Shown one piece after another: positions 12,501 through 45,821 of a stretch of 64,000 bases of DNA. The notes beneath the pieces were generated by a model that saw only the letters and a list, made by a program, of their open reading frames with translations, made no database searches and had not been told where the DNA came from. Both the position numbers and the translations under genes were made by a program. Numbering within the stretch: the stretch's first letter is position 1; each line of letters opens with the position of its first letter. The DNA comes from Dimorphilus gyrociliatus (taxonomy: Eukaryota; Animalia; Annelida). The stretch covers positions 609,498 through 673,497 of the forward strand of contig CAJFCJ010000004.1 in assembly GCA_904063045.1 (NCBI GenBank). Direction: 5' to 3'.

Positions 12501-12568
12501 ACGCTTCCACTAACGTCTAATGACGTCACGGCGTGGATGATGTAAGCGAGTACGGCTGCACAAAGCAT
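8775..12568 (-). CDS. Protocadherin A: 7 cadherin repeats, TM, cytoplasmic tail (about 870 aa)
   Basis: Exon 12568..10220 encodes the signal peptide, EC1-7 and TM, with DRE and DxNDNxP motifs and EC1 DRETICKETVSKC. Phase-0 intron 10219..9039 (gtaaga..aacag). Exon 9038..8775 encodes PPSNK...DSGRGS...TSGEYTI...CSVV*. A strong acceptor (cccatacag) directly precedes the ATG, implying a 5'UTR intron. Confidence 0.92.
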
Positions 12569-15500
12569 CTGTATGGGGGGAAGGGTAAATTAAACGTTAC
12601 CACGCGTATGACGTAATTCATGAATAAATTAGATCGAATCAGTCGCACGAGCGCGCGCCCCTTTTTTTTTGTCAAACTGACTTCAAAAAGACCGTTAAAA
12701 CGTCGCGGTGCTTATATCTGTGATACAGTATACACATACACAAAAAAAGAAACGCCTTTACTTTATCACACCAAACAGTCTGAGATGTTAAGAAGATTAA
12801 CTTCTTTTTTTTTTCTTTCTTTTATAAGACACTGTTAAACGAATAACTTTTAAGACTAATTAATAAACAACGACTTCAAATAAAAGACTATTTAAACATG
12901 AATAGTCGTTAAATAACTATTCATTACCTAGTTTTCCATGTTTATATCAACATTAACAAAGTTGTAAAGGTGTCTAAATATACGTTATGTCATATTATTT
13001 TATATACAATCGATTTACGCCTTACCCTGGATTACTGACTAATTCAACTAATATTTTGTTATTAGAGTAATTTAAAGCCGGGTTGGCTTAGAATAAGAAG
13101 ACAAATCTGCAGAGTTGAAACACCTTCTTTAAGGCTTGTTCTTTAAGCGGCCGCTAAACTCTTTATGAAAGGTTAACGAGAAAGAAACGACAGGAAAATT
13201 ACTCACTTTATGCCCAGTTGCTAACTCGTTCAACCACTCGAAAGTAAGCAAGAATAAATTAGATTAAAACGTTAGAGATTACATTCCTTTTTGTTACTGA
13301 TTGGTGGCAAAAGGGTTCGTTAACCGAAAGGAACGTGCCAAGTTTGGGCGGAATAAAATAGATGAAAAAGAGGTTAGACGAAAGGTAGGAGGGAAAAGGG
13401 GGCGTTTAGCTTTTAGTCGTTACCGACTTACAGATGGAGCGTTTTATGAGAAAAGCTCGTAAGTAATCCTTATACTAAAATTTTCTGTCCAATATAACTT
13501 TCTGCCTTACTCCCCCTTTCTTGCTCACTCTCTCTCTCTCTCCCTCTGATAAACAAATTAGTATTAGAAATTCACAATTTCAATAATTCTTTATTCGATA
13601 ACACGCCCACTTTTCCTCTTTGAAAGACTATTATACAATTTTTTATATTTGTCAACCATAGCAATTAAAGTATTAAATTTATATAAATTAAACTGATTAA
13701 ATAAACAGTAGTAAATCCTCAAGCTAACGAAGGAAAAAAAATAAGAAAAGAAGAGAGAAAAAAGGGGATAAAACAAGAAAAGAACGATTAGTTAAGTGGT
13801 TCGGTATGTATTTTTTAAAATAGACCATTGATAGATTAAATACAACAATGGATTGAACAAGCCAATTATAAAATGGTCTTACGTAAAAAAAGAGAAAGAA
13901 TGAAAAAGAGTAGGAATGAATAAATCAAAATCCAATACTAAACTAATACTTCAAAGCCTATTCATATACCTAACACTAGTTTATTTGCGGATTAGGAAAC
14001 GAGTCAACAGAAGAGTTGTTAAAAAAAAGAGAGGCGAATAAGAGGCGGTAGGCGGGCTTTAAGAAGATAAAAAAAGAGAAGAATATGAATACATATTACA
14101 CACATATACACACGTATATTTATATATAAATATGCTTTTAAGACATATATTTATATATATAATATTTAATCACGTGATTAGTATGTTTTTTACAATCCAC
14201 CCACACCTAATACCCTTTTTCGTATTGTAAGCGTCAATTTCCACACACAAAGTTATATCAGTCTTTTGTTGATGTTATTAAAGTGAAAGAAACCTATAGG
14301 GAGTCCGTCGTGACTCGACCAAGCCGTTAAAAACATTGAATGAGAAAAACTCTCCGTCGATTTCCTGTTCGCGTGAGAACGCTCTATTACTTTTTTTTTA
14401 TACAAAAACCAAAAAAAAACCAACGAAAGGAACATCCTTCTAACCAACCAGGAGGTGGCGTATGTCAGAAGTTTACTACAATTTATATAACAAAGGGAAC
14501 GGAGAAGGAAATACCAAGTGTGGGAATAAAAGTCTAAAGAATTATTGATTTTACGCTTATCCGCTCATTATAAGCGGCGCTAAAGTTCTAATCGACGTCC
14601 GACGAGCATTGTTGGCAGGGTTGATTGGCAGCAATTCGGATGGCTGGTGATTAATAATCGAGTGGCGATTTTAACGACGAGTCGCTCGCGTGACACGATC
14701 GTTTCTTTTCGATTATTTCCCATTTTATTTTATATTTTCATTTTAATGTACATTAATTAAATGGTATTTAGGCGAATGGATGAGTTTAACATACTATTTT
14801 GCTAATCTAATAGGTTAAACAGCATCCTATTTCGTTATGCATCCACCCAAAACGAAATACCAATTTTAAGGGCGACTAACCATGCAAAACTGGAAACAAT
14901 AGGGAACAAGACCAACGCTCTATGCGGTCTATTTTTCATTCTTAGCCTTTAAAGGAAATAGTTACGATCATAATATAGCGTTTTTGATTAGAAGGAATAC
15001 CTAACATTTTTTCTTTCAACTAAAATTGTGGTCAAAACAGAAGAAATTCGATAGACTAGACGAAATGATAAATGAATTTTACACACATACATACACACAA
15101 ATACATACACAATCCTCGAGATACGAGTAATTAATCATAGTAAATTAGGAAAGCGTGCCATCTCTGTTCTCCCCCTCCTCCCTTTCTCCCTCCCTTTTCT
15201 TGTAACAATCATAATAATACCCTCTCTCTTGGGAATTTATTCCAAATGTAAATAAATTTAAATGTTTGTTTCTTAGATATTTAATTACGTAATAACAGAG
15301 AATATATTAGATCTCATAAAATAGTTCACTCGTTTCAGGCGAACCAACTTTTTGCTATGTATATAGTATACAAAAGATAAATGCTAGCTGGCCACCTGCT
15401 CTTTGGCTCCCCAGATGCAAATCTTAGTGGGGGTCAAAACAGTTAATCATGTAAAATCAGAAAGAATATGGAAGCATATTGTACGCGTGCACACCGTCAG

Positions 15501-17178
15501 AAATTCGTTGTCCGTTCTCATGACTTTAATTATCTCTAATATTTACTAATTTGCTACTTCCTTTTATCTGTTTACAATACAGTTCTCCTTCTTTACAGAG
15601 TGAATTACGAACATATGCATACATTTATGCATCTCAATATCCCGAATTAGATATAGGCTTAGAGTATGAAAGCTCTCACGTATCTCTCTTTCTCTCACTC
15701 ACTCACTCACTCTCTTTCTTTCTCTCTTACCCCAACCTCACGACCTTCCTCTTTGGAACGGTTTGCAAATAATGTTGCACTGTTAAACAAACATCTGATA
15801 TAACTCAGGAGATGACTATCAAGATTGAAATTGAAATTTCTATTGAAAATGCAAAGAAACACGTACACGCGCAAATAGTCAAACCTAATAATAAAAAATC
15901 GGGAAAAAGTGGTTTTTTCACTCTAATGAATGAAAATTATTGAATTAGCTTATAAGGGTAGGTTACCACCTCCTATTCATCAAAAATTTTATAGGGTAAA
16001 TGTACTCTTATGAGTACAATCCCTACTCTTTTCTCTCTTTTTCTTGTATATTTAACATATTGTATTTCTACTATATAGTAGAAAAAAAAAAGAACTATTT
16101 GGACAGGGGACACGTTTTGAAATGGACACCCAACGATTTTACGAATAAACAAATAAGAAAGATGGTTTGGAATAGATTCCAGAAAATGAAAGGGAAAACG
16201 AAACCAAGGCATTTTTTATTCCATGGAAAAAAATACCTCTCTTCTCTTCTCTCTCAAGTAAATTTACTTGCCCAAAACATTCGATAACGATAAGGCAACT
16301 CAATTATCACTAACGTAATCCGAAACGTTTATCTCCCCTTTGGCTTTTACCGTAGACCGATAAAAATCGATTTCGTTTACTAAAAGTCAATTATTTTCCT
16401 TATTCACTAACGAGTTCTTCTTTTGTATCAAGTCGGATAGAAAATATTATATCTTTTATAGTGTATTAACAAAGGGATATACGCTAATCTTTCTTTCATT
16501 TATAAAAACTATGGTTGATTAACCGTAAATGATAAATGACGTAGAGTAAGGAAAAATCTTGAAAGAATTAAACGGGTTCACTATTTATTATTTTGGTAAA
16601 ATGTCAGCGAACGCTAATGGTCGTAGGTTGGGGAATAGTAAGATATATAGTTTTTTTCTTCTCCTTTATTCGTCTTCTTTACAATTCTTGTAGCTTTTTT
16701 ATGCATCCAGCGAAATTCTTGTAACGAGATAGCGAAAAATTTTTTCAAAGCTATTCGAAGGTGAAGACCACAATTCTTTTATTCTTAATAAAAAAAATAT
16801 TCCCACCTGGCCACTTTCGAAGTGACCACTTCCTCTTTTTCCCGCGGCTAATTTTTAAAATATTCTCTATCAACTTTCTAATTGGGTATAACTTTACCTC
16901 TCGTTCATATCTTGCACTACATACAAAACTCTGATTTGATAGGCTTATTAAACCTTTAAAAACTTAAACAAACATGTCACGTGTCAAAGATTTTTATCGA
17001 AACATGCCTTATCGCACAAATATAGATAACGTAATGATAAACATAATTTAGTACCTTATTCTGTAATAGGCCTTAAGAGGTAGGAAGAAATTAGATAATA
17101 AAAAAAATAAACTCCTCGGTATCCGTGAGAAAGTCTCTTCCGTACGGTTTCGCGCCGCGATCTGAAAAGTATCAGCGA

Positions 17179-17209
17179 GTCACGTGACATGTTGTTAATC
17201 GCCTATTGG
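17179..17209 (-). promoter_or_regulatory. Putative PcdhA promoter: CCAAT box followed by GTCACGTGAC E-box (on - strand)
   Basis: ATTGG at 17205..17209 and GTCACGTGAC at 17179..17188; candidate 5'UTR exon ending at donor aag|gtacta (17055/17054). Confidence 0.5.
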
Positions 17210-17524
17210 CTGTCCGCTTTCTGTGTTTGGTTTACGTTTAGCGCCCTTTTATAAAAAAGTGACGTTTTCGAACTAAAGCGCTAACGAATTTCTTTGTCTT
17301 GAGAAAAATTAGTGAAAAAAGAGAAAAGTTCTTTCCAGGGGTTTCTCTTTGGCATAAAATTTTCTGTATTCGATAAAAGCTAGAGGTGTTATTTACATTC
17401 CAAAATATCAATGAGAACCATATTGCACTTTATATTTTTGCACGTGACGTCACAAAGTCTATAGTTTGTCATGGTTTGTTAGCGTCACCTGATTTATAAC
17501 ATACATTTATATGTATGTATGTTT

Positions 17525-17544
17525 GTGTGTGTGTGTGTGTGTGT
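17525..17544 (+). repeat. (GT)n microsatellite
   Basis: gtgtgt... run. Confidence 0.85.
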
Positions 17545-19747
17545 ATGTACGAATTCGTAAATAGGTATGATTGCGTTGCGTGTAAAGGAAACAGTTCATT
17601 CATCGGAAAGTTTGACATCGAGTGAGTAATGGTAAATTTCGATGTTTGTCAGTAATCTAACTAGGTTGTTAGAAAAAGTTCGTTAGAAAAACTTAGCTAT
17701 GACATCTTTTCAAATTTATCGCGTCAAGACACGTAGTATATACAAGTGGAGTCTTTTTTTAGGATTTTAGATGATTTAGTCCCATATAATAAATTTACTG
17801 TTACTATACTTTTCGAAATATTTATAGAGTCTTACCATCATAGACAAGCCTTCTTAACTCAAAAAAAACTACATAAATATTGTCTCGAGTCTACAGGTTA
17901 TTTATTTCTAATGACAACTGAGACAAAAATGGCGTCATAATAAAAAGAAATAAAAGTTAACTTTCTTTTTTAACATTTACCTGTTAATTGCGAATGAATA
18001 CAAACTATATATTGTTTGACTTAGACAAAATCCAATATACTCTAGATATTTAATATAAATTAAAATATATATAAATATGTTGAGTTTTTTAATGATAAAT
18101 ATCGAAAGTGTTCAAAGAGAGCAAAGGTAAGAGAGTAGGTTTCGATCAGCTATTAAATCTATATTTCTTTTATTTCTTAATAGTTTTCGAGTGGGGGCCA
18201 CTTAATAACTATAAACTCAGTAAGGGTTGTAGATTTACCTTGTTCCTAACAGTAATTACAATAAGAATAAGCGAAAATATGCATATTTTTCAAATAACAA
18301 TAAAAAAAATACTGACAAGTAGACTATATATGCATAGGATAATAAAGAAAAGGAAAGATCAACAATTCGTTTAAATCGCCGCAAAAGTTAACGGCCTTAG
18401 TTCAGTCAGTTGGCGGACTAATGATACGTTTGAATTCCGTCGAAAAACTTCACCCCGCGGTTTATTTGAGGCGGCTTACATCAAAAGCGAATGTAGGCCT
18501 AGCTGGGGCGGTGAGTCGGGCCCTTTTTCCACCTCCCCGAAGCCTTATATATACAAATAACAGAGAAATATATACCGACTCTTTGAATAATTAAGTTATT
18601 TAAACAATAACTTAACATCAATCAGGCTATCGTATTTATAGAGCTCTTTTATGTAAAAAATTTGCATTATTAATATCATCGAAGAAGATTTCTATAAATG
18701 AGCACGTAACTTCTTATTCGACATTTTTTTATTATTAATAATTTTAACGGTAATTTTTCATTATTATCATAAAAGTATACCTTTTAATACAACTGAAAAC
18801 AATAGGCATAAATAATATGACTTGAATAAAAACTACAGATACGACAATCATTTTCATTCTGTCTATCCCTCATTCTCTCTCTCTTTCTCTCTCTCTGCTC
18901 ATTTGAAAATATATGCTTTTAAAATGTCACGTGATCGTTTTTATTCGCTTTTCTTCTAAATTTTCTATTGAACAGTCATAAATGCAAAAGAGAAAAGGCA
19001 GAAAGAAGTACTTTTTGGAACGTTACCGCTTTTAAAAAAAAATACTGTATATATAAAGAGGAGAGGTTATTATTCATATTTAATTTGTTCCTTTTATAAA
19101 TATCTATAAGGTTTTATTTATATAAATATATGGGGAAGAAAAAAGGATGATAAAAGGATGGTGATGGGTTCATTTTTTATAAATACCCATTTTTGATTAA
19201 GTACCCTTTCCTCTCTGTTAAAGACTATTATACGATTCCTTTGAATTATTGTCTGTCTCTTTCAACAAGTCATTAATTTCCTTGTTTTTTTTATTATTAC
19301 TCGTCTTATGAGCGTTCATATTGGCTATATAGGGGAAGGTTACTACTCCCTCTCTATTCCTCTCTCTCTCTCTCTCTTTACCAAACAAAACTATAGTATT
19401 TAATCGTTCATTTTTTTTTTACAATTGTTCTCAAGCGTTTCTTTTCAAAGGAAGTCTTTTATAGGTTTTTTTCAAGTGGTGGTTCTTTTCTAAGCAGCCT
19501 CTTTAGTACCTCTAATATTTTTACGAGTAAAACAGTTTCTTTCTCTCACTTTTCCCCTCTCCTCTACACTCTTTGACTAAGAGATTTTGTTTATTTAAAA
19601 AATCATTTATTAAGTGAAAATATTTAAATATAAATACGCCATCTGGCGATATAAGTTAATTCTTTCTTAAGAGATCTACAGATGAAGATATTTCAACCCG
19701 GGCTATTACGCCCTGCCCGCATGTTATAAAAATTCGATTGTTGAGAC

Positions 19748-19757
19748 GTCACGTGAC
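19748..19757 (+). promoter_or_regulatory. GTCACGTGAC E-box overlapping a CRE half-site, 45 bp upstream of the PcdhB ATG
   Basis: gagacGTCACGTGACccg in sequence. Confidence 0.5.
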
Positions 19758-19802
19758 CCGTAAAGGAATTATGCGGGTCTCGCGAAAGCTTTCTTCATAA
19801 AA

Positions 19803-22353
19803 ATGTTACCCTTCCTCTTACTTTTTTCTCTCGGTTTTTCTGAAACTTTGCGACTTCACGTTAATGAAGAGACGCCAATTGGCTTTCGTCTACTGGAATT
19901 AGAGAAGAATAAATCCTACCGCTTACTGACTGATACGGATTTATTTAGATTATCTCAAGGTGTTGTTTACGTAAACAACAGGATAGACAGAGAAACACTG
20001 TGTAAGCCAGGCCCTGTATGTGCCACACAACTCGAATTTGCAGTATTACCAATTGAAAAATTGGAAATTTTACGGATAAATATAACTATAGATGATATTA
20101 ACGATAATCCACCTATCGTTAAACCGGAAATTGTAAGAATTAAAATTACGGAATCGACACCTTTAGACGCACTGTTTCCGATTGCTAGTGTTAAAGATGC
20201 CGACGGCGAAGATTACGGTATTAAAACAGTTCAACTGGAAGATAGTTATTTTGGAGTTGTGCACGAATCGGATGAATTACGTCTGATATTGAAGAGGATG
20301 ATCGATTACGAAAGACTGGATAATACGATTATGAATATGTCAATATCAATAAGTGACGGATATTACAATACTTCCTTGTCAATTATTGCCGAGATAATTG
20401 ATATAAACGACAACCCCCCAATATTCGAAAAAGAAGAATATATCATTGATATCTATGAGAATTTAACTATAAATACGCAGATATTGAACCTCAAGGCCGT
20501 CGATCTCGATTCAACAATCCAATTTCGATTAGTAAAGTATTCATTAAGTACTAACCAATATTTTGGTGTCGATGCGTATAATGGAACTTTAAAGTAATAA
20601 TGAACCGCTAAGCGATATTTAATAAAGCGTACTATATGTATATATGAACTGCATGCAGTATGTATATATACAATGTATACATATACATATTGTGTATATA
20701 TTTATATATATACACGGCGATAAGAGTATACATAACAGATATCTTTCTTCCCAACGTTTTAAAACACTTTTGACCCCTTTTTTTTTTTAAAAAAAAGAAG
20801 GCGTTAACAACTATTATCGGTTCATTAATACTTAAAGAACCCTTAAAAAGCTAAATTACGAAGCGAAGCGGCTGTTTCACCTAACTGCTACAGCTACTGA
20901 TGCTGGAGGTCTATATTCCAGGACGTCGATAATAATAAGGCTTTTGAATATTAATGAGAGATCGTTTCGAATCAAAGTCACGCCCATTACTGGCTACGAT
21001 AATGAATTATTGATCAAAGAAAATCTCTTGGCAAACAGTGTCGTAGCTCTCGTTAAAGTCGAATTGGACGAATGGGAGGAGTCGGTCAATAATGTCGAGT
21101 GCTTTTCGGACGAATCGGAAAAGTTCAAAGTGTCTAGATTAGATAATCAGCTAGTTTTATTGACTAATACGTCTTTCGACAGGGAGTTTGAGGAAAGATT
21201 TAGCTCAAGAGTAATTTGTGTTAATTTAGGCGTCTATAGAAATCAAAGTATAGACGTCCGAATTGTAGATGAGAATGATAATGCACCCGAGTTTGTTCAA
21301 TCCGAGTGGATTGTTGAGGTTGAAGAGAATATCCCTCCTGCAACGCTAATAGCAATTTCCGCTACAGATTCCGATAAAGGTATAAATAAGTATACTGCGT
21401 TTAATTAATTCGAATGAGTAAGAAATTACTTTTTTATAGGCCTAAACTCAGAATTAAGGTACGAAATTTACGGCGAAGATTGCTTCCAGATCCACCCAAT
21501 TTTCGGTACTTTATCATCAACGTGTGAATTCGATTTCGAAGTTAGGACCGTCTATAATTTAACTGTACACGTTTTTGATGGAGGGGAGCCAAGTTTGAAC
21601 AACTCGGTCGGGGTGAAGGTCATCGTTAAGAACCTCCTCGATACGCAACCCGAGTGTTTGGACAATGAATTTCGTGTTTTGGAGAATGAGGGTGGTGTTT
21701 ATCTGGGTCAAATCTCGTTTCGAAATCCCGAAAATTCTACCGTCTTCTTTAGTAAATATGACGAAAAGCGTTTTTCGATCTCGAACGAAAGTGTCTTCCT
21801 CAGAGAGCCCATCGATCGAGAACGTTTACAGACTGTCAACTTACGACCACTAATCTTGTATGACCTTGACCCAAGGGTTAATTCCACCTGCCAACTCGTA
21901 ATCAACATTGTCGATCTGAATGATAACGTTCCCGAAATCGTTTTCCCATCTAACGATTCTACCCTCCACCTACCCGAATCCTCTTTCAATCGCAACAGGA
22001 AGTTGTTAAGCATAGTAATCAGAGACGACGACGAAGGGTTGAACGGTGAAATAGACGTCTTCTTGAAACCGGAAATTTGCTTTCGATTGGACGGTTTAGA
22101 CGTCGTGTTCGATTGTTCAACTTCAAATATTGGTGACGTTTTCAATCTGGAATTATTTGCTAGCGATAAAGGAACACCGGCCTTAAATACCTCGGTAACC
22201 TTTAAGATTATCCGGATAGAAGATGCCGAGGAGAAGGAGAATTATTTGCCATTTATATTAACTGTAACATTATCCGCAATACTTCTTGGAAGTTTGATAA
22301 TAATTTTAGTCCGGACTATCAAGATTCAAAGGAAGAAGGTTATCATCAGCTGA
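19803..22353 (+). CDS. Protocadherin B: 7 cadherin repeats, TM, very short tail (about 748 aa)
   Basis: Exons 19803..20593, 20838..21379, 21440..22353. Introns 20594..20837 (phase 2, restores NGTLKTLKKLNYE) and 21380..21439 (phase 1, restores DSDKGLNSELRY). EC1 DRETLCKPGPVC (C-x5-C); TM LPFILTVTLSAILLGSLIIILV. The 3' end is uncertain. Confidence 0.88.
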
Positions 22354-25300
22354 TATAAAAACCTAGGCCTTTTTTTGTAATAGCTCTCCCGCAACATTGA
22401 CCTACGAGGTTAACCGAACCTGCAGACTTCTAATCTTAGCGATGCGAAAGATAAGTTTGAACAAAAAAAAGAAACGGTTTTTTTTTATTTGAATAACTTT
22501 ACCTCTGAGTTGAACAAAGGGGTGACGCCCCGACGCGGTTGATATTGCTTTGAACGACTGATAGATTGAACTTGAAAAAGAGTATATATTGTCATGATAA
22601 AAATAGAGACAAAATAAGAATAAGAATTATATATAAAAGAAAAAAAAATAAAATTGAAAACGAAATAAAGAAACTAAATTGATACTTTCGAAATTTTTTT
22701 ACTCTTTATAATGAAGAAAGACGAGAAGGGGGCTGGATGGCCTATTAGACGGAGGAGCGAAGCTAACTAAAATTGTTAAATTCCTTTCCTTCTTCTGGTA
22801 AATAGGCCTATAATAGGTATTACCTTCAACAACTACCGACCCACGTGTCATAGGAACTTGCTAATTCATATAATCAAAGTTGTTGATCTGAAAGATAAAA
22901 CGTTCCTGAAATAATTTTTCGGCTGAGCGCCTCTCCTAAGGAATTTTTTTTCCTTTCTTTTATTTTGCTTTTGACGAGATGTCCCTGAGGAACGCTGGTG
23001 TGGGGACTGGAAAAGATTAAATAGAGAATGATAGAGTAGGTGAAAGAACCGGGGACAGACTATCAAGGCCGATAGTAGGATATGAGAGAGAGAGAGAGAA
23101 AAGAGAAGTTTGATTTGTGAGATTTTCCCTTAGTTGCCCTTCTGTTTCTCTCATACTTATCTAGGCGCGCGATTACTCATGACCTATAGCCGAGCGGTCG
23201 AGGTCTGTTTATAGTTTATGATTAGAAATTATTCTAGGCTTAAAGTTGATTTGTTTTTCCTACCTATCTTTTCTTTTTATGGTATTTGTTGATGAGAAAA
23301 CCTTTCGAAATCGTTCGAATTCCGTTTAAACAAGAGATTTATCTGGGGATATTTTAACAGCAAATAATCTGGTGTGAGAGCAGCGTCGTCTCTCAAGCTA
23401 TAGGGGCGTGTTTGGGTAGAGGTAACCGCTTATCGTAGTTATTGAAAGAAAAGAAAAAGGATTAAGGAATCTATAGCTTGCAGCTACAAATTCCTCCTAA
23501 AAGGTGCTTATTTGAGAGAGGAAGGGGTTGTGGAAAATTGCTCTCCCACTGACCTAAAAGTAAGAAATAAAAGGAAGGAATAGAATGGTATGGGTTGCCG
23601 AGGTTGGGTGATAAAGGGTAAGGAGAGGAAATAGGTGAAAGAAGTAAAAAATAAGGAAGAATAAGGGAAGAAATGCGGGCTCCGTGTTCGTGCGTTAAAA
23701 ATATATCACTTAAAGAAAAGTAAACGACGTGCATTTTTTTTTATTGAAACGCTCTTCGCCGTATTAACGCGCGCACACTTTGCAAACAAACGAAAGTGAT
23801 GAGAAACGGACATTCGGACGCGTACTGTTTGATATTCCAATTCGGGCGGTCAATTAGGAAAACATACACTACTACTGTGTACGAAATATATTCCTATTCC
23901 CTAGGTGGTCGATTCAAGAATTTTTCCCTCCACTTCATACAGGCTTATATGGTCACTTAACACATTTTATTAATGGGGTTTTTTTGTTATTGCATCGTCT
24001 CTGTTACCTACTTTACTCTTTTATCGTATATTTTGATTTGTTACTATAAGTGTAAATTAGTAGTACTATAAGTTGAATTAGTAGTACTAGAAATTGTAGA
24101 TTCGAAAGCCGATATTGACGATCTCGAAACAAGACGGAAGCGGAAACTGCTTCTAGTTAACAAGTAGGTCACGTGCTCAGCTCTACCTGGCCAAGATATA
24201 TCTGTCGAAAAATTATCGACTTTCAAAAGAATACAGGCAAATCTATGAAGAAACTTCAAACAAGAATATATTTATATAATAACTGCATTAAAACGTAGTT
24301 TTTACGCTCGCAAAGTTAGAATATTCCAATCTATAATAATAAAATGAAGTAATAAACCCTTTCTTTAAAAAACATTAAAAATCTCGCGCCTCAGAAAACA
24401 GCGCCACCTAAGTACACTCTCAAGACTACAAGGACTGTTAGTTTTTTTATGGGATAAAAAAAATGTAGGGTCTATTTAGTTCAACGAACAACAAACAAAA
24501 TGAATGACAAAGAATAGGGAAGGGAAGGAAGATAAGCTAAGGGAACTTTTAGAAGAGACGTGAGAGAGAGAGAGAGAGAGAGAATGAAGGAATAGGGTTG
24601 GAAAAAAACTCAATGAACATTTTGAATATTTATTAATCCTCCTTACATATTCGATTATTCATACGTACGGCCCATTCCCTTCAATAATTATAATTTTATT
24701 GTGATTTTTTTGTCATCAATTTCTATATTGTCGTTAATCTTTGCAAAAATTATTTTAATAATAAAACTAAAAATCGTCCGGAAGTTAAAAAGAAGAAGAA
24801 AAAAAATGACAAATGGCGTAATTCTCTTTTAAAAATGTAGGGCGTCATACGGTAAAAATTCCATGGGTCAAGTAGCGTTTATGACGTCCTCTTCGCTTTT
24901 TAACGCCGAACGTCCGAAACACCTCAAAGCTTTTGAGACCAAATGTCATTAAATCGTCTTTACCGCGTAGAATATATGCATAGGTTTTTGTATATAAATA
25001 TAAAAAAAAACACGGATCCATATAGAGTATGGTATTCTAATAAAATATTCGTGATAATTGACCGCAAAAAAGGATATCAATTTTAGTTTAAAGTAAAATA
25101 TTTAAACAACAATGATAAACAGTTTTTTTTGGGCTATAAAAGGTCTTATAAAAGGTAGGGATTGATTTTGTCCCCCTCCCCCCTCCTCCTCAATATAGGC
25201 CTTTTCTAATATTATACCCCTGAATATATAACAATTATAATCGATTCGTTTTTACACTCAATTGAAGAATAGGGTCTATAAGTTAATCTCATTAAAAATA

Positions 25301-25902
25301 AATAATAAGTTATATAGTCTGTTGAAGGGAAAAATAGTAGCTTCAACAATTTTATTCAAGTGCAATATTACTGATAAGAGAGATTAAATCAAAGCTTCAG
25401 TATACTTAAACTAAGGCTTAAAATCTTGAAAATATCTCAATTCTTAGATCCGAATGTTTAAACTTTTTTAATCAATTTAATCGAATTAACTTTGATAGTA
25501 TGTTATAATTTTGTATCGTCTTTGCCTAATTAAAGAATTGAATGTGTTGAATGAAAGTGTATAAAACCCCTTTTGGGAAACTACAGGGGCTATTTGGAAA
25601 AAGTTCCCAAGGTGCTAGACCATTAAAATGATCTAGAATTCAACATGAGGTAAACATAACTCAAGTAAAGGAAAAGCAGCGACAAATTGCGAAAATGACA
25701 CAAAGTAAGTGTTTACGCAACTTGGACCTATGTTTTGACGTATTAGTACTATTATTTAATATTTTAAGAACCTCTTCCTTTTCTTCTTTAGACTACAAAT
25801 ACCAACTTGTTATATTTTCTTTGACGATAGTCTACTATAATCTATACAATATATCAAAGGCTTTATAAATGTGCATATATACTGTCGGTGGTAGGTATAT
25901 GT

Positions 25903-26126
25903 CCACTAGGTGGAGACATCTCTAGAACTGGTAAAAAAGTTGAGAATTTGTTAAATTTTTGCAAGTTGCTTGCTTGAAGAAAAAAATTATTCTTTTAGCT
26001 TCCATATGGTAACGCCACCTAGAGTATACCTGTCAAATACGCCACCTATAGAGTACTGAATTAGCTGTAATTAAAGCGTTCGCACGACGTTGACAGATTC
26101 AACGGGGTCATGACGTCATGACGTCA
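25903..26126. promoter_or_regulatory. Motif-dense element: three CTCF-like sites and a tandem CRE (TGACGTCATGACGTCA)
   Basis: CCACTAGGTGGAG at 25903, CGCCACCTAGAG at 26013, CGCCACCTATAG at 26040, TGACGTCA twice at 26111..26126. Confidence 0.45.
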
Positions 26127-27886
26127 TTAACGCCTTTCGAGTAGTTCTTCAAGTTGACAGGCGTCAAAACGCTTTTTAGTCTAAAGGCTTGGCATCGGAA
26201 TTTTTCTCAATTTTCAAATATTATTCATTTTCTTTTGAACAAGTCCCATCCCACCTTCTCATGCTTTATCATAGTTTTTCTATTTAAAAAACACAAATAG
26301 AAGAAAGGAATTAGACTCATTAAGAGCATGTCGTATGATGGACAGATGGTAAGAGAGGGACGAATAAAAGAGCGGCTGTAAGTCTATTATAAAGAATAAA
26401 GCCGCTATTCAACAGAGTAGCCTATACAACCGTGTAATATATTAGGAGATTTTACCGAGGATTTATTGTTGTAATAGTCTAAATATTTTTTCGATTAAAT
26501 AGTTTACGACGACTCGGTTTTCTTATGTCCTTTGTACTAAACGACTTGTTCACTATCCGTTAAAAATGAATAATATCTCTATAAAAGAAGAGAAAATTAA
26601 GTCTATGATAGAGAGATAAAGAGAATAGAGAATAAGAAAATAACTAGCCCCAACACGTTTTTTTCAGGTCTTTTTTTACTTTACTAAGGTAGTTTTGATA
26701 ATTACGAGGTACTTAATCCACTCGGGTAGTAGAAAGGTCATGTTTTAAACAACCTCAACTATTTTTCTTGCTTTTACATAAGCTCTCTTTTTTTCTTCGT
26801 CTCCTTTTTTGTTTTTCTTCTTTTAAGAAGGTGGAGGTGGGCGGGAGAGGGCGGACGGTGGAGGTGGCAGCTGTTTATATATTGAACTTTCTATATAACG
26901 ATATATTTGCATTAACAATTACATATACTGTTCGATGTGAGGATAATGAGCGCCGATATTTACAATGCGTGTTCATATTTTACTTCTCAATGTTTAATGA
27001 TAAGAAAATCAATCCTAGTTAGGTTTTTTATGGACTCGAAGAGTTCGTCTTTCTTTTTTCCGCCTCTTCTTCTTCAAAGTCTATTTGTCCAAGTTCAAAA
27101 ACGTCTTTTCCTATCTAAATAAAAGAGAATATATATTTTTAAATATACAGTTTACTATTATATATATTTATATATACTGTATATATGCATATATATATAT
27201 AACTTTTTTTCTTTTATTTTCTCTTCTTTTCTTCCTCTTCTACTCTTTTTTTTTAACTCATTTATATTTATTTTTCAACACCACCTAGGCCTAAATAAAA
27301 CCTTTTGAATAATAATTATAAAAGTAATAGAAAAAGGAAAAATACACCATTCTAAAAAAGGTATGAAATTATTCTTAAGAAAGTAAGTACTTAACATTTA
27401 TTAGCAATGGTAATAAAATGAGTACAACTTTAATAGTATCTTTTTTTGATAGGTTAATAAAGAAAAACACTGGTATTCCTGCTGTATAGGTTATTTTTAA
27501 CTAGTATTTACAAACTGTAATAAAAAGAATTAAATGTATCAATTGAAGTTGAAGAGAAATTTTATATACATATATACCCATAAACATTTGCATTCTTTGT
27601 TTATACACCTATATAAACAGTCCCTGTATATTTTGAGTTTTTTCATGTATAAATATACATCACTTTTAAAGTTCAAGAATAAAAGCTATTAATGATACAT
27701 TTATTCTAGGAAACGCTTACCATACCTACAATCAAAACAGTCCAATTACAAATTTTTCCATTAATCCTATAATGATGTATAGATAAGGGATACTAAAAAG
27801 CGGTAGAAAGCGCGCCGCTTTTTAACTTCTCTTGCTCTCCCCCCCCACCGCCTCGCCTCTCTCTTTTTTCTCTTTCTCTTCCCAAG

Positions 27887-27964
27887 TCTAATTATTCACT
27901 TGGCATATTACTGATGGTATTTTTACAACCCAATCTTGGTGAACATTCAAATGGTACTGGATGT
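27887..27964 (+). other. Candidate orphan 78-nt exon
   Basis: About 40-nt pyrimidine tract plus cccaag acceptor, perfect gtaagt donor, open in phase 0 only; host transcript unknown. Confidence 0.4.
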
Positions 27965-29389
27965 GTAAGTTGACTCGCAGCGTCTAATTATCTAGAATGA
28001 ATTGGAGTAGCTTTCCAATTAACTTCGGTATATGCACCGAAATAGGCTTAAACTTGAAAATTTCAAAGAAACAATCACCTCCTATTGTCGATGTGGGCTG
28101 AACTGTTACACATATAATCACTCCTATGAGAATAAGGTGGCATACTATTTTTAAACACTAATTGAACTGGCCGGAAGAAGAAGTCTCACATATATAGATT
28201 TCAGAAAACGTATACCTTCTCTAAATAAACAAACAAATAATAGTTTATGTGATTGGGTTCTCTAGTAGATTAGGCCTATAGAAAAGCGTGTAGAACATCT
28301 TATAGTTTTTGTTCTCTACATTTTTTTGTAGCATGTTTAGAAAAAAAATAAAATAGGAATAAGATGAGAAAAGGAATATATAGATAAAAGAGAAAAAGAG
28401 AGGTAATTTAGCGTGTTCCCACAATGTTAAATGGGATATTACATATATACGGTTTGTTATGTAAGAGAAGCAATAAATTTAAGTGTATCGTTTTAAGAAG
28501 AAGTCAATAGATAAAGGATATAAAGAGCAATTAACACGTATATTCCCTGCGAAAAAAAGACTCCAAACTCTTTGTTTTCCTACACGTAATCCTCGTTGTT
28601 ATTATAACGAACTAACCAAATCAAACGCAACCGTCGCTCACAGCATGAAATCTTCCATTTTAGATCGGATCTCAAACAAAGTTTTACGGAATTTATTACG
28701 CGTGAAGAACGTTCCTTTGTTAACAACCGATCCTAAAAAAGCGGCGGCTCCTATAATGATAACTTTATCAGTCAATACGCTTTTCTCGCCCCTAGGGGGG
28801 CGATTTTTGACGCATGGGCGGGCTGCCCATTCGTAAGAATATATAGAATCAAATAGATGTAGAAATAATGTTTATAAACTACATTTTGGTGTTATTAAGA
28901 GAAGAAAAGAGTGTGGATAGGTTCAAATTTCTATCGTTTTAACTGTTTCAATAGGGTTTCGAGTTCATAAATCCAATTGATATCCTAACGAGAAAAAGCT
29001 GCCCTTTTATACGCAATTTTCAAGGACTACAGAGAGTATAAATATACATATACACACGTATATATATAAGTATGGTATCCATTTCTCTGAACTTTTAAAC
29101 GTCAGCCGCCAAACGGAGGCACATTTTTCTCTTTTCCTTTCCCTTAACTTTTCAATTGCAATTTACATTTCTAAAGTTTAAGTTTGTATTCACAGCCTAA
29201 ATTAATCTACCTGGATTCCTAGGTAGGTTTTAATTCTTCAAATAAGATTAGAACAACACTAAAAATAACTTATTTATACACACTCTTTTATATATAGAAG
29301 AAGGAAATTATAGATTTTATAAATATATAATTATATATGTATATATTTATATAAGTGTACGGTAATATATATTTATATATAGAAGTATA

Positions 29390-29416
29390 TATAGTATATA
29401 TATATATATATATATA
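29390..29416 (+). repeat. (AT)n microsatellite
   Basis: atatat... run within an AT-repeat-rich stretch. Confidence 0.8.
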
Positions 29417-30192
29417 AATTTTAATATACATTGAAATAAAGAGCCAAAGAACCATATTATATCTATTGACAGAGCTAAACTTATGAAAATAATAACTCTT
29501 ATTATCGAATGTATTAAAAGAAATTGGATTTTTTATATTAATATGTCATTTATCTAAGAAGAAAGAAAACTGGTATTTTTTCGAGTTAAGGTATGAAATG
29601 GTGTACGTTATTTATATATATTTAATTGGGTAAACGTGTGAAATTTCTAAATAGACGAACGTGGCATAACGCTTTTTCTCGTTAAATTGACGCCTCGGTA
29701 AATAAAATTTTACCAGATTTGTTGAATATTCCTAATCTTGTTATCATCATTGCATAGTTTACGGATTTATATCCTAAAGTTTAGTTTTATTTACTTTAAC
29801 TAGACATTCTAGCTATAATAAACTAATAAACTAGTCGACAGACTTAGGGCAGCAGGATAATTATCGCCTTGCTCAACTCTTCGATTATGTAACGCGGAAC
29901 GCTTAAAAATATACGAGCATGTTACATAAGAAATTTTCCAACCTGCTCAATTTACAGAAATTCGGAAATTCGAACGACAGCTATTTCCGGTGAAGAAAAT
30001 CTGTAGGTTCTACTTAATAGTCATGTTCCACACGCGTCCGTGGAACAATAAACAAACACAGGGAAAACAAATAAACTGCCCTAGGCCCAAATATATGGGT
30101 TAGGCTTAATCAAAGCGTTAATTAGACGAGTGTAAACTAGACGAAAAACAGTGAAAAATATTCCTTTAATCAGACAGTGCCGCCAATTAACA

Positions 30193-30282
30193 CCGCCCTC
30201 CTAACCTTATTTGCATAAAGCACTATCCAATCAGCGACATCGAGAGTCACGTGACGTTTCGCGAGCTCGCTTTATTCAGTCT
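30193..30282 (+). promoter_or_regulatory. Putative PcdhC promoter: GC box, octamer ATTTGCAT, CCAAT box, GTCACGTGAC, TCAGT Inr-like
   Basis: CCGCCC at 30193, ATTTGCAT at 30209, CCAATCAG at 30227, GTCACGTGAC at 30246..30255, ttcagtc at about 30276; downstream donor gag|gtgaat at 30385 and acceptor ccctag| at 32565, 13 nt before the ATG. Confidence 0.55.
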
Positions 30283-32578
30283 GGTGTACATACATGTGGC
30301 GAGCAGATATTTAACCGTCTCCCCCTTTGAAGTTTTGACTGGAATAAAGAATTTTGCAGAGCCCCATTGAAGAGGATAAAGGAGGTGAATATTTCATAAA
30401 TTATTGTTGAAGAATGCTTTTTCAAGTGTTCTATAAAGCCGTATGGCTTTATTGAATTTTCTAGCTGTAAATTTATCAGTAATTGACGTTGATTATTAAT
30501 GAAGATTTTTTATTATGACTCTACCCTCATTGTTGATCTTTTTTGAATAATTCTTATCTTACGCTCCATCAATTTCATAAATATTTCCTAAAGGACTTTT
30601 TAAGCCTTTCAGACGCCTCTATTTAGTTCAATTTAAAAACTTTTTTATTCAATCGCTTCTTAAAGAGTGTACGTATATGGAAAGGGTAAAAGGATTGACA
30701 CTCCGATTTGTATATCGGGTCAATAAACAATTTAAACGACCTTTTATCTGTATATTGCGGTGGAGGGCTTTATTCTACTCTCTTAATTTTTTGTTTTTTA
30801 AATTGATCCCATTCTTAACGCTATATTTTTTTATATCTTTTATTTTTTATCAAAGAAGATCAACTGACAGCTTGACATAGGGTATGTTTGCCTGATGAAT
30901 AATTAATTTATCCGACGGGTACTTGATTCAAGCGTCATACGTGACATTGAGACGATCTTTCTCCAATCTTCTGTTATTTGCATTTTACTTGAAAAAATTT
31001 TCACGGATAGTTAACTAATCAATACCCCTTTATAATAAGTTATTATTAGTTTTAAAAAGAGCTATTTATAGATGGCGCAATTTACAAAGAAAAAAATCTA
31101 TGGCGGGAAATGTTTCATATTTATGTATTGTTTGGACATCTTTCATTCTTTGAGCTCAGATAACAAATATAAAAGTATAAAGGAACATCGCTTTCTCAGG
31201 GATTATACCAAGTACGAAAAGAACCTTTAATTATACTTTAATTGTAATTTGACCCAATATAAATGATCTAATATTTCTAAAGCTTGCTAGAACTCGCACG
31301 AGCGTTTCCTTTTCACGAGAAACATAGAATTATTAATATTAAAAAAGTATGAACTCCCACAACGACTACGAAAATCTCTTATGTTTAATTAATTTCCAAA
31401 TTAAAAACAGTAATATGAAACATAGAGCCTATATAAGATTACAAGCGTTACCAGAGCACGATTTTAGGATAGCTTTTTATTGAACAAAAAGTAAACATAA
31501 ACAAATATTAAGATTGATGTTTTGAAAGTGTCTGCTTTCTTTCTTTTAACACATTTTTTTATGTTTCTCTACGCTAATTACATACTATAAACAGCCGATA
31601 GGTTTTTAGATACGTAAGTTGATCTACCGATTTAGCCTTATCTTTATAGACTTGGAACGTTAAGCTTTAATGCCGGTAAAGTTCTCACTAAGATTACTTT
31701 ACATGAATCGGCAATTGCCCTTCGGATATTCTTGTTAGAAACTAGTTTTTTTTTTATAACAATAAAAGAAATAGGGCTGTATAGTTCAAAGAGAGTAAAA
31801 GATAAATGTCAAAATAAATAGGGTTTATTTACAATTTTCAAACAAATGTTCAAAAATATTTAACCTTGTTTTTATAAAAAGAAAAAAATTCATCCGAAAA
31901 CGGTAATTGGAAAAAATAATAGAAAAAATAACGCTCCGGGGTTAATTAGCACAATTCGTTAAAAGTACATAAGAGTAGTTGGAACTGTAAAGAAAACACT
32001 CGAGACTCCTCCCGACGAACAATTGAACGCTTTCAATCCATTAAACGCTCTTATATTGTTTTCAGAACAATAAAACACGGGTGGTCGTCTTTCGACACTC
32101 GGTAAAGTTCTTATTAGAACTGCTCCTCACTGTAGTTTAGCGTTCCGTCCAACCGTTTCCGATTGACAGCTAAGAATGAAAGATGTCACCCCGCCGGGCG
32201 TTACAAAATTTCCCAGTCGGATGTTCTCTCAGACAAACAAGCTCGTTTCGGTTACGTAATCAACTACGTTTACTCAATATTCCACCCTTCCAAAAAGCGC
32301 TTCAAAGACATTCGAGTATGTACGTACGACACTTCAATGTTTAGTTCGAACTTGAAAATTTCGAGTGCTCGATATACAACTCGAGATTTATAGCGTTGTG
32401 TGAAAAAAATCCTTTAAGAATATGAAATGACTAACTTGTAAAGGAACGCACGCCTTATCTTACTGTTGTTATAATCATTAGGACAACAACAGATAGGCTC
32501 GATAAAAAAGGTGTCAGCGCTTAGAGACTATGCTTTATACAGTGCTTTTTTTTATCTCACCCTAGGGTTATTTGAAGT

Positions 32579-41165: not shown

Positions 41166-41620
41166 GGGGGTCCGGGTAAAGGGTTAATGTAGGAATGGAA
41201 AAGATCCTTTGGTTTATTTTGGTACGCCTAAAAACAACTTGAAGCAAGTCTGTTTTTATTTGTAGATTTAGCCTGCTTTTTTTTTCTCTTTTACGCCTTT
41301 TGAACCTCAAAGAAAAAGAGCAACAAGAAGAAAAAATAGGGAGAAAGAGAAAAAAAGGGAAATTTAATCTTTTCCCACCATATTATACTGTATATATAAC
41401 TTCAAGATTTATATTCAGTGTAAATAAAAATTTATTATACGGAATAAAACATTTAATAGGAGAAACTACAGAATCTTTGGCAATTAATAATTTTAGTTGA
41501 AACAGATGTAGTTAATAGTCGATAGTAGGATAATTATTCTCTCTTTTATTCTGTTAACTTATGATAATGAATGTCGTTCATAACATATTTCTTTTTTTTA
41601 TAAAGGTAATGTACGCTTGC

Positions 41621-42001
41621 ATGAAGAATTGGCAAAGTTATATTGATAAACTAAGCGAACATGGAAAAATTAAGAAAGCAGCTCTAATTAAGAAAGATTT
41701 TACTAAGCAGGCAACATCAAAGAACTTTTTAATAAGCATCTCCGAAATTTATCAACTGATTGATTTAGTCGAAAATTCGTACGATGAAGAAGCAATTACA
41801 ATTCAGGGATGCGAATATAAATTAAATAAAGGGTTTAATAATTTTATTACGGGATTAGCTACTGATCAGCTAACTTCGTTTGCGATTGCTCAAACGAAAT
41901 TCTTCATTGTTATTGCTATCGCAAAATATCCTGATCAAGAAAAGAATGATCTTAAAGAGGTTGAATGGATTTACAATCATGTTCTAGAAGAAGGCTTCTA
42001 A
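41621..42001 (+). CDS. Divergent profilin-family protein (about 126 aa), intronless CDS
   Basis: N-terminal WQSYID, KAALI, ITIQGCEY, AQTKFFIVIA and C-terminal VEWIYNHVLEEGF match the profilin pattern and length. Start could be 41609 or 41621. Confidence 0.75.
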   Translation: MKNWQSYIDKLSEHGKIKKAALIKKDFTKQATSKNFLISISEIYQLIDLVENSYDEEAITIQGCEYKLNKGFNNFITGLATDQLTSFAIAQTKFFIVIAIAKYPDQEKNDLKEVEWIYNHVLEEGF

Positions 42002-45749: not shown

Positions 45750-45821
45750 GGGGGTATAGCTCAGTGGCAGAGCATTCGACTGCAGATCGAGAGGTCCCCG
45801 GTTCAAATCCGGGTGCCCCCT
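45750..45821 (+). tRNA. trnC-GCA: tRNA-Cys (GCA)
   Basis: GGGGGTA acceptor stem pairs with TGCCCCC; D arm AGCTCAGTGGCAGAGC; anticodon loop CTGCAGA (GCA at 45782..45784); T loop GGTTCAAATCC; oligo-T Pol III terminator at about 45830..45838. Confidence 0.97.

What the first reader, a model, noticed from the sequence alone, without database searches (positions are those of the whole stretch)
12569..32578. All three protocadherins share the same palindromic promoter element GTCACGTGAC
Seen in sequence: the exact 10-mer occurs at 17179 (upstream of PcdhA on -), 19748 (45 bp before the PcdhB ATG) and 30246 (upstream of PcdhC). I noticed no other exact copy. Near-variants (GTCACGTG at 16976, 18907, 24168; CACGTGACGTCAC at 17441) concentrate in the same interval. 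A rough estimate assuming about 30% GC gives only about 0.01 chance copies per 64 kb. Established: vertebrate clustered Pcdh promoters share a conserved CTCF-bound element (CSE), and GTCACGTGAC is the USF/MiT-TFE (CLEAR-type) bHLH-ZIP site. Inference: this invertebrate mini-cluster may be co-regulated, or compete for a factor, through a convergent shared promoter code of its own.
Basis: partly seen in the sequence, partly recalled or inferred. Interest (0 to 1): 0.75.

Follow-up and report, generated by a model that had tools for sequence, protein, structure and literature searches.

The report
Conserved E-box shared by protocadherin promoters
Three neighbouring cell-adhesion (protocadherin) genes of the tiny marine worm Dimorphilus gyrociliatus each carry the same 10-letter docking site for a common class of gene switches at or near their start, and a sister species keeps every copy, so the site is very probably functional, but it is an ordinary kind of switch site rather than a new protocadherin-specific code.

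Summary
GTCACGTGAC occurs exactly three times in the 64-kb window (17179, 19748, 30246), against none in 100 shuffles. One quoted near-variant is misplaced: 18907 should be 18926.

RNA contigs tie two sites to promoters. The 5'UTR exon of PcdhA (17126-17055, minus strand) begins 53 nt downstream of the first site and splices straight onto the ATG at 12568. The second site lies 45 nt upstream of the ATG of PcdhB, which is spliced and expressed. For PcdhC the promoter role is inferred only.

In a close relative (about 82% nucleotide identity) all three 10-mers are unchanged. So are all 10 CACGTG cores in the aligned 26 kb, four of them as conserved islands in diverged flanks. The flanks of the three sites are unrelated and the proteins are old paralogues (27-34% identity), so this is not duplication residue.

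The best reading is a USF- or MiT/TFE-type bHLH-ZIP site, with a CCAAT box upstream in two of three promoters, that co-regulates the genes.

The analogy to the vertebrate CSE/CTCF promoter-choice system is not supported. Whether the site is specific to protocadherins genome-wide could not be tested. Other unchecked notes of this scan report CCAAT+CACGTG modules at Hox genes and elsewhere in this genome.

The parts
17179..17188 (.). Palindromic E-box GTCACGTGAC in the PcdhA proximal promoter
   Evidence: Exact match. It lies 53-62 nt upstream of the 5'-most base of the PcdhA transcript contig. It is identical in the relative, inside a block of 96% identity.
19748..19757 (.). Palindromic E-box GTCACGTGAC in the PcdhB proximal promoter
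   Evidence: Exact match. It ends 45 nt before the ATG at 19803. The spliced RNA contig starts at 19822. It is identical in the relative, with flanks 97% identical.
30246..30255 (.). Palindromic E-box GTCACGTGAC, candidate PcdhC promoter (inferred)
   Evidence: Exact match. It sits in a conserved non-coding block of about 1 kb (29600-30600, 92-95% identity) and is identical in the relative. No RNA evidence was obtained. The ATG is 2323 nt downstream.
17055..17126 (-). PcdhA exon 1 (5'UTR; at least this much)
   Evidence: The X6 transcript contig (3222 nt) ends at 17126. Its loose end at 17055 is the reverse complement of the PcdhA start, ATGCTTTGTGCAGCC....
12569..17054 (-). PcdhA intron 1 (GT..AG), holding conserved E-boxes at 14170 and 16976
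   Evidence: The junction 17055|12568 comes from the contig's loose end. The donor GT at 17054-17053 and the acceptor cag|ATG are read from the sequence.
10202..12568 (-). PcdhA large ectodomain exon (788-aa ORF)
   Evidence: Pfam Cadherin E=2e-78, plus Cadherin_2.
19803..22353 (+). PcdhB coding region: exons 19803-20593, 20838-21377, 21438-22353
   Evidence: The RNA contig shows GT..AG joints 20593>20838 and 21377>21438. Cadherin domains. The frame is open across the joints (local script only).
32579..34798 (+). PcdhC ectodomain exon (DgyrCDS2804/2805)
   Evidence: 100% identity to NCBI DgyrCDS2804. Pfam Cadherin E=7e-88.
17205..17209 (-). CCAAT box, 18 nt upstream of the PcdhA E-box core in gene orientation
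   Evidence: Read from the sequence. Conserved in the relative.
30227..30231 (+). CCAAT box, 16 nt upstream of the PcdhC-side E-box core; a second CCAAT is at 30183
   Evidence: Read from the sequence. Both are conserved in the relative.
17441..17453 (.). E-box overlapping a full CRE (CACGTGACGTCAC), about 260 nt upstream of the PcdhA promoter
   Evidence: It is 100% conserved within a conserved block. It shares the 11-mer GACGTCACGTG, in reverse orientation, with the PcdhB promoter site.
18926..18935 (.). Accessory E-box GTCACGTGAT in the A-B intergenic region
   Evidence: TCACGTG is conserved as an island in flanks of 70% identity.
14170..14177 (.). Accessory E-box TCACGTGA in PcdhA intron 1
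   Evidence: The 8-mer is conserved while its flanks differ.
16976..16985 (.). Accessory E-box GTCACGTGTC, about 70 nt into PcdhA intron 1
   Evidence: The 10-mer is conserved.
24168..24175 (.). Accessory E-box GTCACGTG downstream of PcdhB
   Evidence: Conserved in flanks of 75% identity.
19637..19644 (-). AGATGGCG (CTCF/YY1-like) motif about 105 nt upstream of the PcdhB E-box
   Evidence: Conserved in the relative. It is one of 7 copies spread over the whole window.

Best explanation
GTCACGTGAC is a functional class-B E-box with T/A flanks. That is the preferred site of USF and of MiT/TFE (TFEB/TFE3/MITF-type) bHLH-ZIP dimers. It sits in the proximal promoters of PcdhA and PcdhB and in a probable promoter or alternative first-exon region of PcdhC.

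A dimer of one such factor binds each promoter just upstream of the start site. My guess for the factor is USF about 60%, MiT/TFE about 25%, other CACGTG binders about 15%. In two of three cases it would act next to NF-Y on a CCAAT box 16-18 nt upstream.

Further conserved TCACGTG sites lie in the first intron of PcdhA and in the A-B intergenic region, one of them fused to a CRE. These would add a homotypic cluster of sites. The three old paralogues would then be driven as one co-regulated unit.

Shown: the motif exists, is non-random and is evolutionarily constrained, and it is promoter-proximal for A and B. Inferred: the identity of the binding factor, activation and co-expression, and the promoter role of the third site.
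For: Statistics:
- 3 exact copies against 0 in 100 shuffles.
- TCACGTGA 6 against 0.5 expected, all in the cluster.

Promoter position:
- The PcdhA transcript contig's 5' end at 17126 is 53 nt from the site, and exon 1 is spliced to the ATG.
- The PcdhB site ends 45 nt before the ATG, and the gene is expressed and spliced.

Constraint:
- A relative at about 82% identity keeps all three 10-mers and all 10 CACGTG.
- 9 of 9 non-coding CACGTG are conserved against a 6-mer background of 0.454, p about 8e-4.
- Four are islands in flanks of 70-79% identity.
- CACGTGA and CACGTGAC are the top-ranked conserved 7-mer and 8-mer in the non-coding alignment.

Not residual homology:
- The flanks do not align.
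- The proteins are 27-34% identical, and C is closer to foreign proteins than to A.

Local specificity:
- No other gene of the window (VWA/EGF, profilin, GPCR-like, Skp1, EFCAB10-like, kinase, alpha-catenin) has the 10-mer or even TCACGTGA. That is 3 of 3 against 0 of 7, Fisher p about 0.008, counting C as a promoter.
- The generic AGATGGCG motif, by contrast, is spread over the whole window.

Factor class:
- The 10-mer equals the CLEAR element bound by TFEB (PMC8175148).
- NF-Y and USF are known promoter partners (PMC4889920).
Against: - No binding, accessibility or CAGE data were available here, so the factor and the exact TSSs are unknown.
- The PcdhC link is inferred. A second, 96%-conserved block right before its ATG (31950-32530) could be the real promoter.
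- CCAAT-to-E-box spacing (16 and 18 nt) is not the 10-12 bp reported for human NF-Y/USF, and PcdhB has no CCAAT.
- Conservation was tested in only one relative, and several sites lie in blocks that are conserved as a whole.
- The k-mer ranking does not survive correction for about 1600 tests.
- The genome-wide frequency of the motif at promoters is unknown.
- Unchecked notes of this scan report CCAAT+CACGTG modules at Hox and other genes, and GTCACGTG stands before an unrelated ORF at 49956. The site may therefore mark a broad class of promoters rather than a protocadherin regulon.
Confidence: 0.6

Rival explanations
1. Generic promoter element. The USF-type E-box, often with a CCAAT box, is a common proximal element of many D. 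gyrociliatus promoters. Its presence at three neighbouring genes would then say nothing particular about protocadherins.
For: - CACGTG/USF with NF-Y is a widespread promoter module in human (PMC4889920).
- GTCACGTG with a CCAAT 55 nt upstream lies about 100 nt before the EFCAB10-like ORF.
- Other first-stage notes in this genome report ATTGG-N11-CACGTG modules at Hox genes and elsewhere (unchecked).
- Most regulatory information in this genome is promoter-proximal (PMC7854359).
Against: - None of the 7 or more other genes in the window has the exact 10-mer or the 8-mer core.
- With 0 of 7, a frequency above about 30% is unlikely, and even at 30% three of three would occur in under 3% of cases.
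- Six further conserved E-boxes (four of them TCACGTG-type) concentrate in the cluster's introns and intergenic DNA, not only at promoters.
Confidence: 0.25
2. Protocadherin-specific promoter code analogous to the vertebrate CSE. The shared palindrome would let the three promoters compete for one factor or enhancer, giving alternative or stochastic choice.
For: - The identical 10-mer is at all three genes and conserved.
- Large conserved non-coding blocks in the cluster could hold shared enhancers.
- Vertebrate clustered Pcdh promoters do share one element (PMC7811963).
Against: - There are only three genes, and they are old, divergent paralogues. PcdhA and PcdhB face away from each other, and both are present in the one transcript run laid.
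- The distance to the ATG is not fixed.
- The motif is a generic bHLH-ZIP site, not a CTCF site. The CTCF/YY1-like motif is present at one promoter only.
- No 10-mer lies upstream of two distant homologues.
- There is no evidence of choice or competition.
Confidence: 0.05
3. The sites are bound by a different CACGTG reader. Candidates are a bHLH-PAS clock pair (CLOCK/BMAL-type), a Hes/Hey-type repressor, or Myc/Max/Mondo-Mlx. The shared control would then be rhythmic, neurogenic-repressive or metabolic.
For: - All these factors recognise CACGTG (my own knowledge).
- The PcdhB site has the CACGTGACCC flank that, from memory, is preferred by CLOCK:BMAL1.
- Two sites overlap CRE-like sequence.
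Against: - 11 of 13 CACGTG in the window carry a T flank (TCACGTG) on at least one side. From my own knowledge that is the USF and MiT/TFE preference, not the Myc/Max (CCACGTGG) or Hey (GGCACGTGCC) preference.
- The full 10-mer equals the CLEAR consensus (PMC8175148).
Confidence: 0.09
4. Chance, or residue of duplicated sequence.
For: The motif is short and palindromic. The genes are paralogues in one cluster.
Against: - 0 of 100 shuffles give one copy.
- The flanks are unrelated.
- The paralogues are ancient.
- All copies are conserved in the relative.
Confidence: 0.01

Closest known systems
USF-type E-box with NF-Y CCAAT box in proximal promoters (human NF-Y/USF module, PMC4889920)
   Same: - A CACGTG core with T/A flanks lies within about 60 nt of the transcript 5' end.
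- A CCAAT box lies just upstream in two of three promoters, in gene orientation.
- All of these elements are conserved.
   Different: - Spacing is 16 and 18 nt rather than the 10-12 bp reported for human.
- PcdhB has no CCAAT.
- Binding by USF or NF-Y was not tested.
CLEAR element (GTCACGTGAC) of the TFEB/TFE3 lysosomal-autophagy network (Sardiello 2009, as summarised in PMC8175148)
   Same: The 10-bp palindrome is identical and lies close to transcription start sites.
   Different: - The targets here are cell-adhesion genes, not lysosomal or autophagy genes.
- There is no evidence that the worm's MiT/TFE factor binds.
Conserved sequence element (CSE)/CTCF site of vertebrate clustered protocadherin promoters (PMC7811963)
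   Same: One short element is shared by the promoters of neighbouring protocadherin genes.
   Different: - The sequence and presumed factor differ (bHLH-ZIP rather than CTCF).
- There is no fixed distance to the ATG.
- There are three old paralogues, two of them in divergent orientation, not a tandem array of variable exons.
- No promoter choice has been shown.
E-box/CRE composite of activity-regulated neuronal promoters (USF plus CREB at BDNF promoter IV; from my own knowledge, not checked in a paper here)
   Same: CACGTG overlaps TGACGTCA at 17441, and a CRE-like half overlaps the E-box at the PcdhB promoter. Both are fully conserved.
   Different: This is a resemblance of sequence only. The arrangement differs in detail, and no activity dependence is known.

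Membership tests
Class-B E-box of USF / MiT-TFE type | CACGTG core with a 5' T and 3' A flank (TCACGTGA); full palindrome GTCACGTGAC | tested here: met
   All three sites match exactly. 11 of 13 CACGTG in the window have at least one T-flanked half.
Class-B E-box of USF / MiT-TFE type | Evolutionary constraint on the site | tested here: met
   All three 10-mers and 10 of 10 CACGTG are conserved in a relative at about 82% identity. For the 9 non-coding sites p is about 8e-4.
Class-B E-box of USF / MiT-TFE type | Bound by a bHLH-ZIP dimer in vivo or in vitro | not testable with these tools
   No ChIP, DAP-seq or footprint data are reachable here.
Proximal promoter element | Lies within about 100 nt upstream of a mapped transcription start | tested here: inconclusive
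   PcdhA: the contig's 5' end is 53 nt downstream of the site. PcdhB: the ATG is 45 nt downstream and the contig starts at 19822. Contig ends are not capped 5' ends. PcdhC: no RNA evidence (searches were blank).
NF-Y/USF stereo-specific module | CCAAT and CACGTG 10-12 bp apart (PMC4889920) | tested here: not met
   The spacing is 18 nt at PcdhA and 16 nt at PcdhC. There is no CCAAT at PcdhB.
CLEAR network (TFEB targets) | GTCACGTGAC near the TSS | tested here: met
   The consensus is as given in PMC8175148.
CLEAR network (TFEB targets) | Target genes are lysosomal or autophagy genes | tested here: not met
   The targets are cadherin-repeat adhesion proteins.
Vertebrate clustered-Pcdh CSE/CTCF promoter-choice system | [quoted passage not shown] | tested here: not met
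   The genomic distances are 45 nt, 4.6 kb and 2.3 kb.
Vertebrate clustered-Pcdh CSE/CTCF promoter-choice system | The element is a CTCF-binding site | tested here: not met
   The 10-mer is an E-box. The AGATGGCG (CTCF/YY1-like) motif is at the PcdhB promoter and in the region between the 30246 site and the PcdhC ATG, but not at all three promoters.
Vertebrate clustered-Pcdh CSE/CTCF promoter-choice system | Tandem variable exons spliced to shared constant exons; stochastic choice of one promoter | not tested
   PcdhA and PcdhB are divergent and each is a spliced gene of its own. Shared tail exons are the subject of other notes. Promoter choice needs single-cell data.

The most novel reading that the evidence does not exclude
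The three old protocadherin paralogues have been held together as a cluster because they form one regulatory unit. That unit would be read through a homotypic set of conserved USF/TFE-type E-boxes: three promoter palindromes plus at least five accessory sites, one of them fused to a CRE. This would be an invertebrate counterpart, with a different factor, of the shared-element logic of vertebrate clustered protocadherins, possibly coupling adhesion-code expression to neuronal activity.
Probability: 0.1. Interest if true: 0.7.

Novelty: new member of a known kind. Interest (0 to 1): 0.35.

Why it matters
If the site is a real, shared input, it gives a simple, testable handle on how a small invertebrate protocadherin cluster is co-regulated. 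The genome is compact and nearly all its regulation sits at promoters. CAGE and ATAC-seq data already exist for this species (PMC7854359), so the claim can be checked at once. It would also offer a contrast to the CTCF-based vertebrate system. As it stands, it is a well-supported example of an ordinary conserved transcription-factor site, not a new mechanism.

Tried and rejected
- Repeat or transposon origin: rejected, the flanks do not align.
- Small RNA genes near the sites: Rfam and ARAGORN find only tRNA-Cys at 45750.
- PcdhB as a pseudogene in three ORF pieces: rejected, the RNA contig shows two GT..AG introns.
- RNA evidence for the PcdhC 5' end. Exact look-ups of the 716-aa model, the 739-aa ORF and the PcdhA ORF were not on record. 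The 933-aa isoform gave only the NCBI genome locus.
- Published motif lists. The D. gyrociliatus genome paper and its held supplements contain no mention of E-box, USF, bHLH, NFY or protocadherin. Two further annelid papers were also blank.
- Papers on E-box/USF control of protocadherin promoters: none relevant found.
- Deep conservation: no 10-mer within 10 kb upstream of a Capitella homologue or of an unnamed ENA homologue. This is inconclusive, because their promoters may lie further away.
- Species of the relative (SRR23372228/29/16): not identifiable from the paper library.
- Genome-wide motif count: not possible. No tool here holds the rest of this genome.
- Spliced PcdhB model. It was searched by exon 1 only. 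The three exons were joined only inside local scripts to check the frame and pairwise identity. The search with the joined protein was left out.
Full report
**1. Observation**

GTCACGTGAC occurs exactly three times in the window, at 17179, 19748 and 30246. None of 100 dinucleotide-preserving shuffles produced a single copy. CpG is not depleted here (observed/expected 1.08, GC 32%), so the shuffle is a fair null.

With one mismatch there are three more sites: 16976, 18926 and 34443.

| Motif | Found | Expected | Where |
|---|---|---|---|
| CACGTG | 13 | 3.2 | 10 of 13 lie in 14.1-34.5 kb |
| TCACGTGA | 6 | 0.5 | all inside the cadherin cluster |

The 200-nt flanks of the sites do not align. The copies are therefore not part of a repeat.

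**2. Genes and organism**

- The ORFs at 10202-12568 (minus strand), 19803-22353 (plus) and 32579-34798 (plus) carry cadherin and protocadherin-type domains.
- The third equals DgyrCDS2804/2805 of *Dimorphilus gyrociliatus*, on contig CAJFCJ010000004.1.
- The three proteins are 27-34% identical to each other.
- PcdhC is closer to proteins of other species (37-40%) than to PcdhA (34%).
- They are therefore old paralogues. A shared 10-mer cannot be left over from a recent duplication.

**3. Are the sites at promoters?**

One run (X6) holds spliced transcript contigs.

*PcdhA.* A 3222-nt contig ends at 17126 and covers 17126-17055. Its loose end at 17055 is the reverse complement of ATGCTTTGTGCAGCCGTACTCGCTTACATC, the first 30 bases of the PcdhA ORF. 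PcdhA therefore has a non-coding exon 1 of at least 72 nt. It is joined across a 4.5-kb GT..AG intron directly to the ATG at 12568. The E-box lies 53-62 nt upstream of the 5'-most transcribed base detected.

*PcdhB.* A 2539-nt contig begins at 19822 and shows two GT..AG introns (20594-20837 and 21378-21437). PcdhB is an expressed, spliced gene and not a pseudogene. The ATG at 19803 opens a signal-peptide-like sequence and lies 45 nt after the E-box. The TSS must therefore be within, or just beside, this short interval.

Contig ends are not capped ends, so exact TSSs remain open.

*PcdhC.* I could get no RNA evidence (searches were blank). Four things favour the 30246 site as its promoter:
- The layout matches PcdhA in gene orientation: CCAAT-N16-CACGTG against CCAAT-N18-CACGTG.
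- A conserved pyrimidine tract plus AG ends 14 nt before the ATG, followed by diverged 5'UTR-like sequence.
- No annotated gene lies in the 10 kb upstream.
- The site sits in a conserved block of about 1 kb.

Against it, a second block at 31950-32530 is 96% conserved and could be the true or an alternative promoter.

**4. Constraint**

Logan assemblies of three runs (SRR23372228, 29 and 16) hold collinear orthologous contigs of an unnamed close relative. Overall nucleotide identity is about 82%. The ectodomain-exon ORFs compared (PcdhC and PcdhB exon 1) are 80% identical at protein level.

- All three 10-mers are unchanged in the relative.
- All 10 CACGTG of the aligned 26 kb are unchanged.
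- For the 9 non-coding ones, a 6-mer background conservation of 0.454 gives p of about 8e-4.
- Four sites (14171, 18928, 22842, 24170) are conserved islands in flanks of only 70-79% identity.
- In an unbiased ranking of non-coding k-mers by conservation, CACGTGA and CACGTGAC are the top 7-mer and 8-mer. This ranking would not survive multiple-test correction on its own.
- The CCAAT boxes next to the A and C sites are conserved too.
- The TCGCGA that follows the B and C sites is conserved only at B.

**5. Specificity within the window**

At least seven other protein genes have their 5' ends in the window: VWA/EGF, profilin, a GPCR-like gene, Skp1, an EFCAB10-like gene, a kinase and alpha-catenin. 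None has the 10-mer or even TCACGTGA anywhere near. That is 3 of 3 against 0 of 7, Fisher p of about 0.008, if PcdhC is counted.

By contrast, AGATGGCG occurs 7 times against 0.6 expected and is spread over the whole window. One copy stands 105 nt upstream of the PcdhB E-box. This motif is CTCF/YY1-like, and the genome paper reports the CTCF motif as the commonest in open promoters (PMC7854359).

The E-box is not exclusive to the cluster. GTCACGTG with a CCAAT 55 nt upstream stands about 100 nt before the EFCAB10-like ORF. Other unchecked first-stage notes on this genome describe ATTGG-N11-CACGTG modules at Hox genes and elsewhere. A genome-wide count could not be made with the tools at hand.

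**6. What it most likely is**

The 10-mer equals the CLEAR element bound by TFEB (PMC8175148). From my own knowledge it also equals the USF optimum. NF-Y and USF are documented promoter partners in human, with a preferred 10-12 bp spacing (PMC4889920). Here the spacing is 16-18 nt.

I therefore read the sites as binding sites of one bHLH-ZIP factor, with USF the more likely. They act as proximal activator sites at three promoters. Accessory sites in the first intron of PcdhA and in the A-B intergenic region back them up, including an E-box fused to a full CRE at 17441. Binding and effect are inferred, not shown.

**7. Comparison with the vertebrate CSE**

The CSE lies at a similar distance from each start codon and binds CTCF (PMC7811963). 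Here the distances are 45 nt, 4.6 kb and 2.3 kb. The motif is not a CTCF motif. PcdhA and PcdhB are divergent genes, and both are present in the one transcript run laid (X6).

Two distant homologues (Capitella and an unnamed ENA assembly) have no such 10-mer within 10 kb upstream. That result is inconclusive.

The promoter-choice analogy is therefore not supported. Co-regulation is plausible.

**8. Verdict**

This is a real, conserved, promoter-associated transcription-factor site shared by three clustered protocadherin genes. It is an ordinary kind of element in a new place. Its specificity, and the role of the third copy, remain to be tested against the public CAGE and ATAC data.

- The spliced PcdhB model was searched by exon 1 only. 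The search with the joined protein was left out.

Noticed in passing
window 3407, 4189, 19637, 31070, 37257, 44509, 60570: AGATGGCG (CTCF/YY1-like core) occurs 7 times against 0.6 expected and is spread over the whole window. The two copies that lie in the aligned part are conserved in the relative. This fits the report that a CTCF-like motif is the commonest in open promoters of this genome.
   Followed up: partly
window 31950-32530: A non-coding block of about 580 nt, 96% identical to the relative, lies directly upstream of the PcdhC ATG. It is more conserved than the coding exon (about 83%). It could be an alternative promoter, an intronic enhancer or an unannotated RNA. There is no Rfam hit.
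   Followed up: partly
window 29600-30600; also 14500-14700, 18300-18700, 23700-23900, 28500-29100: Many conserved non-coding blocks (92-96% against an 82% average) lie in the introns and intergenic DNA of the cadherin cluster. The most conserved non-coding 6-mers are homeodomain-type (CAATTA, AATTAA, TAATTA, GGATTA), and GACGTCA (CRE) also ranks high.
   Followed up: partly
window 19803-22353: PcdhB looks broken into three ORFs but is a normal spliced gene with introns of 244 and 60 nt. It ends in a transmembrane segment and a very short tail (...RTIKIQRKKVIIS).
   Followed up: yes
window 49853-49860: GTCACGTG (8 of the 10 letters), with a CCAAT 55 nt upstream, lies about 100 nt before the ATG of an EFCAB10-like ORF (49956-50270). 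It is a similar E-box at an unrelated gene.
   Followed up: no
window 16277-17656 and 19821-21999: Coral metatranscriptome runs and one further run hold contigs 92-93% identical to this locus, one of them collinear with non-transcribed DNA. Dimorphilus-like worms of another lineage seem to be present in those samples. They could serve for finer footprinting.
   Followed up: no
window 17497-17556: A (TG)n/(TATG)n microsatellite just upstream of the PcdhA promoter block is largely absent in the relative.
   Followed up: no
window 41561-42001 (L007 15395-19423): The NCBI model joins the VWA/EGF gene and a complete profilin ORF into one 622-residue product. This looks like a merged gene model.
   Followed up: no
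window 45750-45821: tRNA-Cys (GCA) gene between the GPCR-like gene and Skp1.
   Followed up: yes
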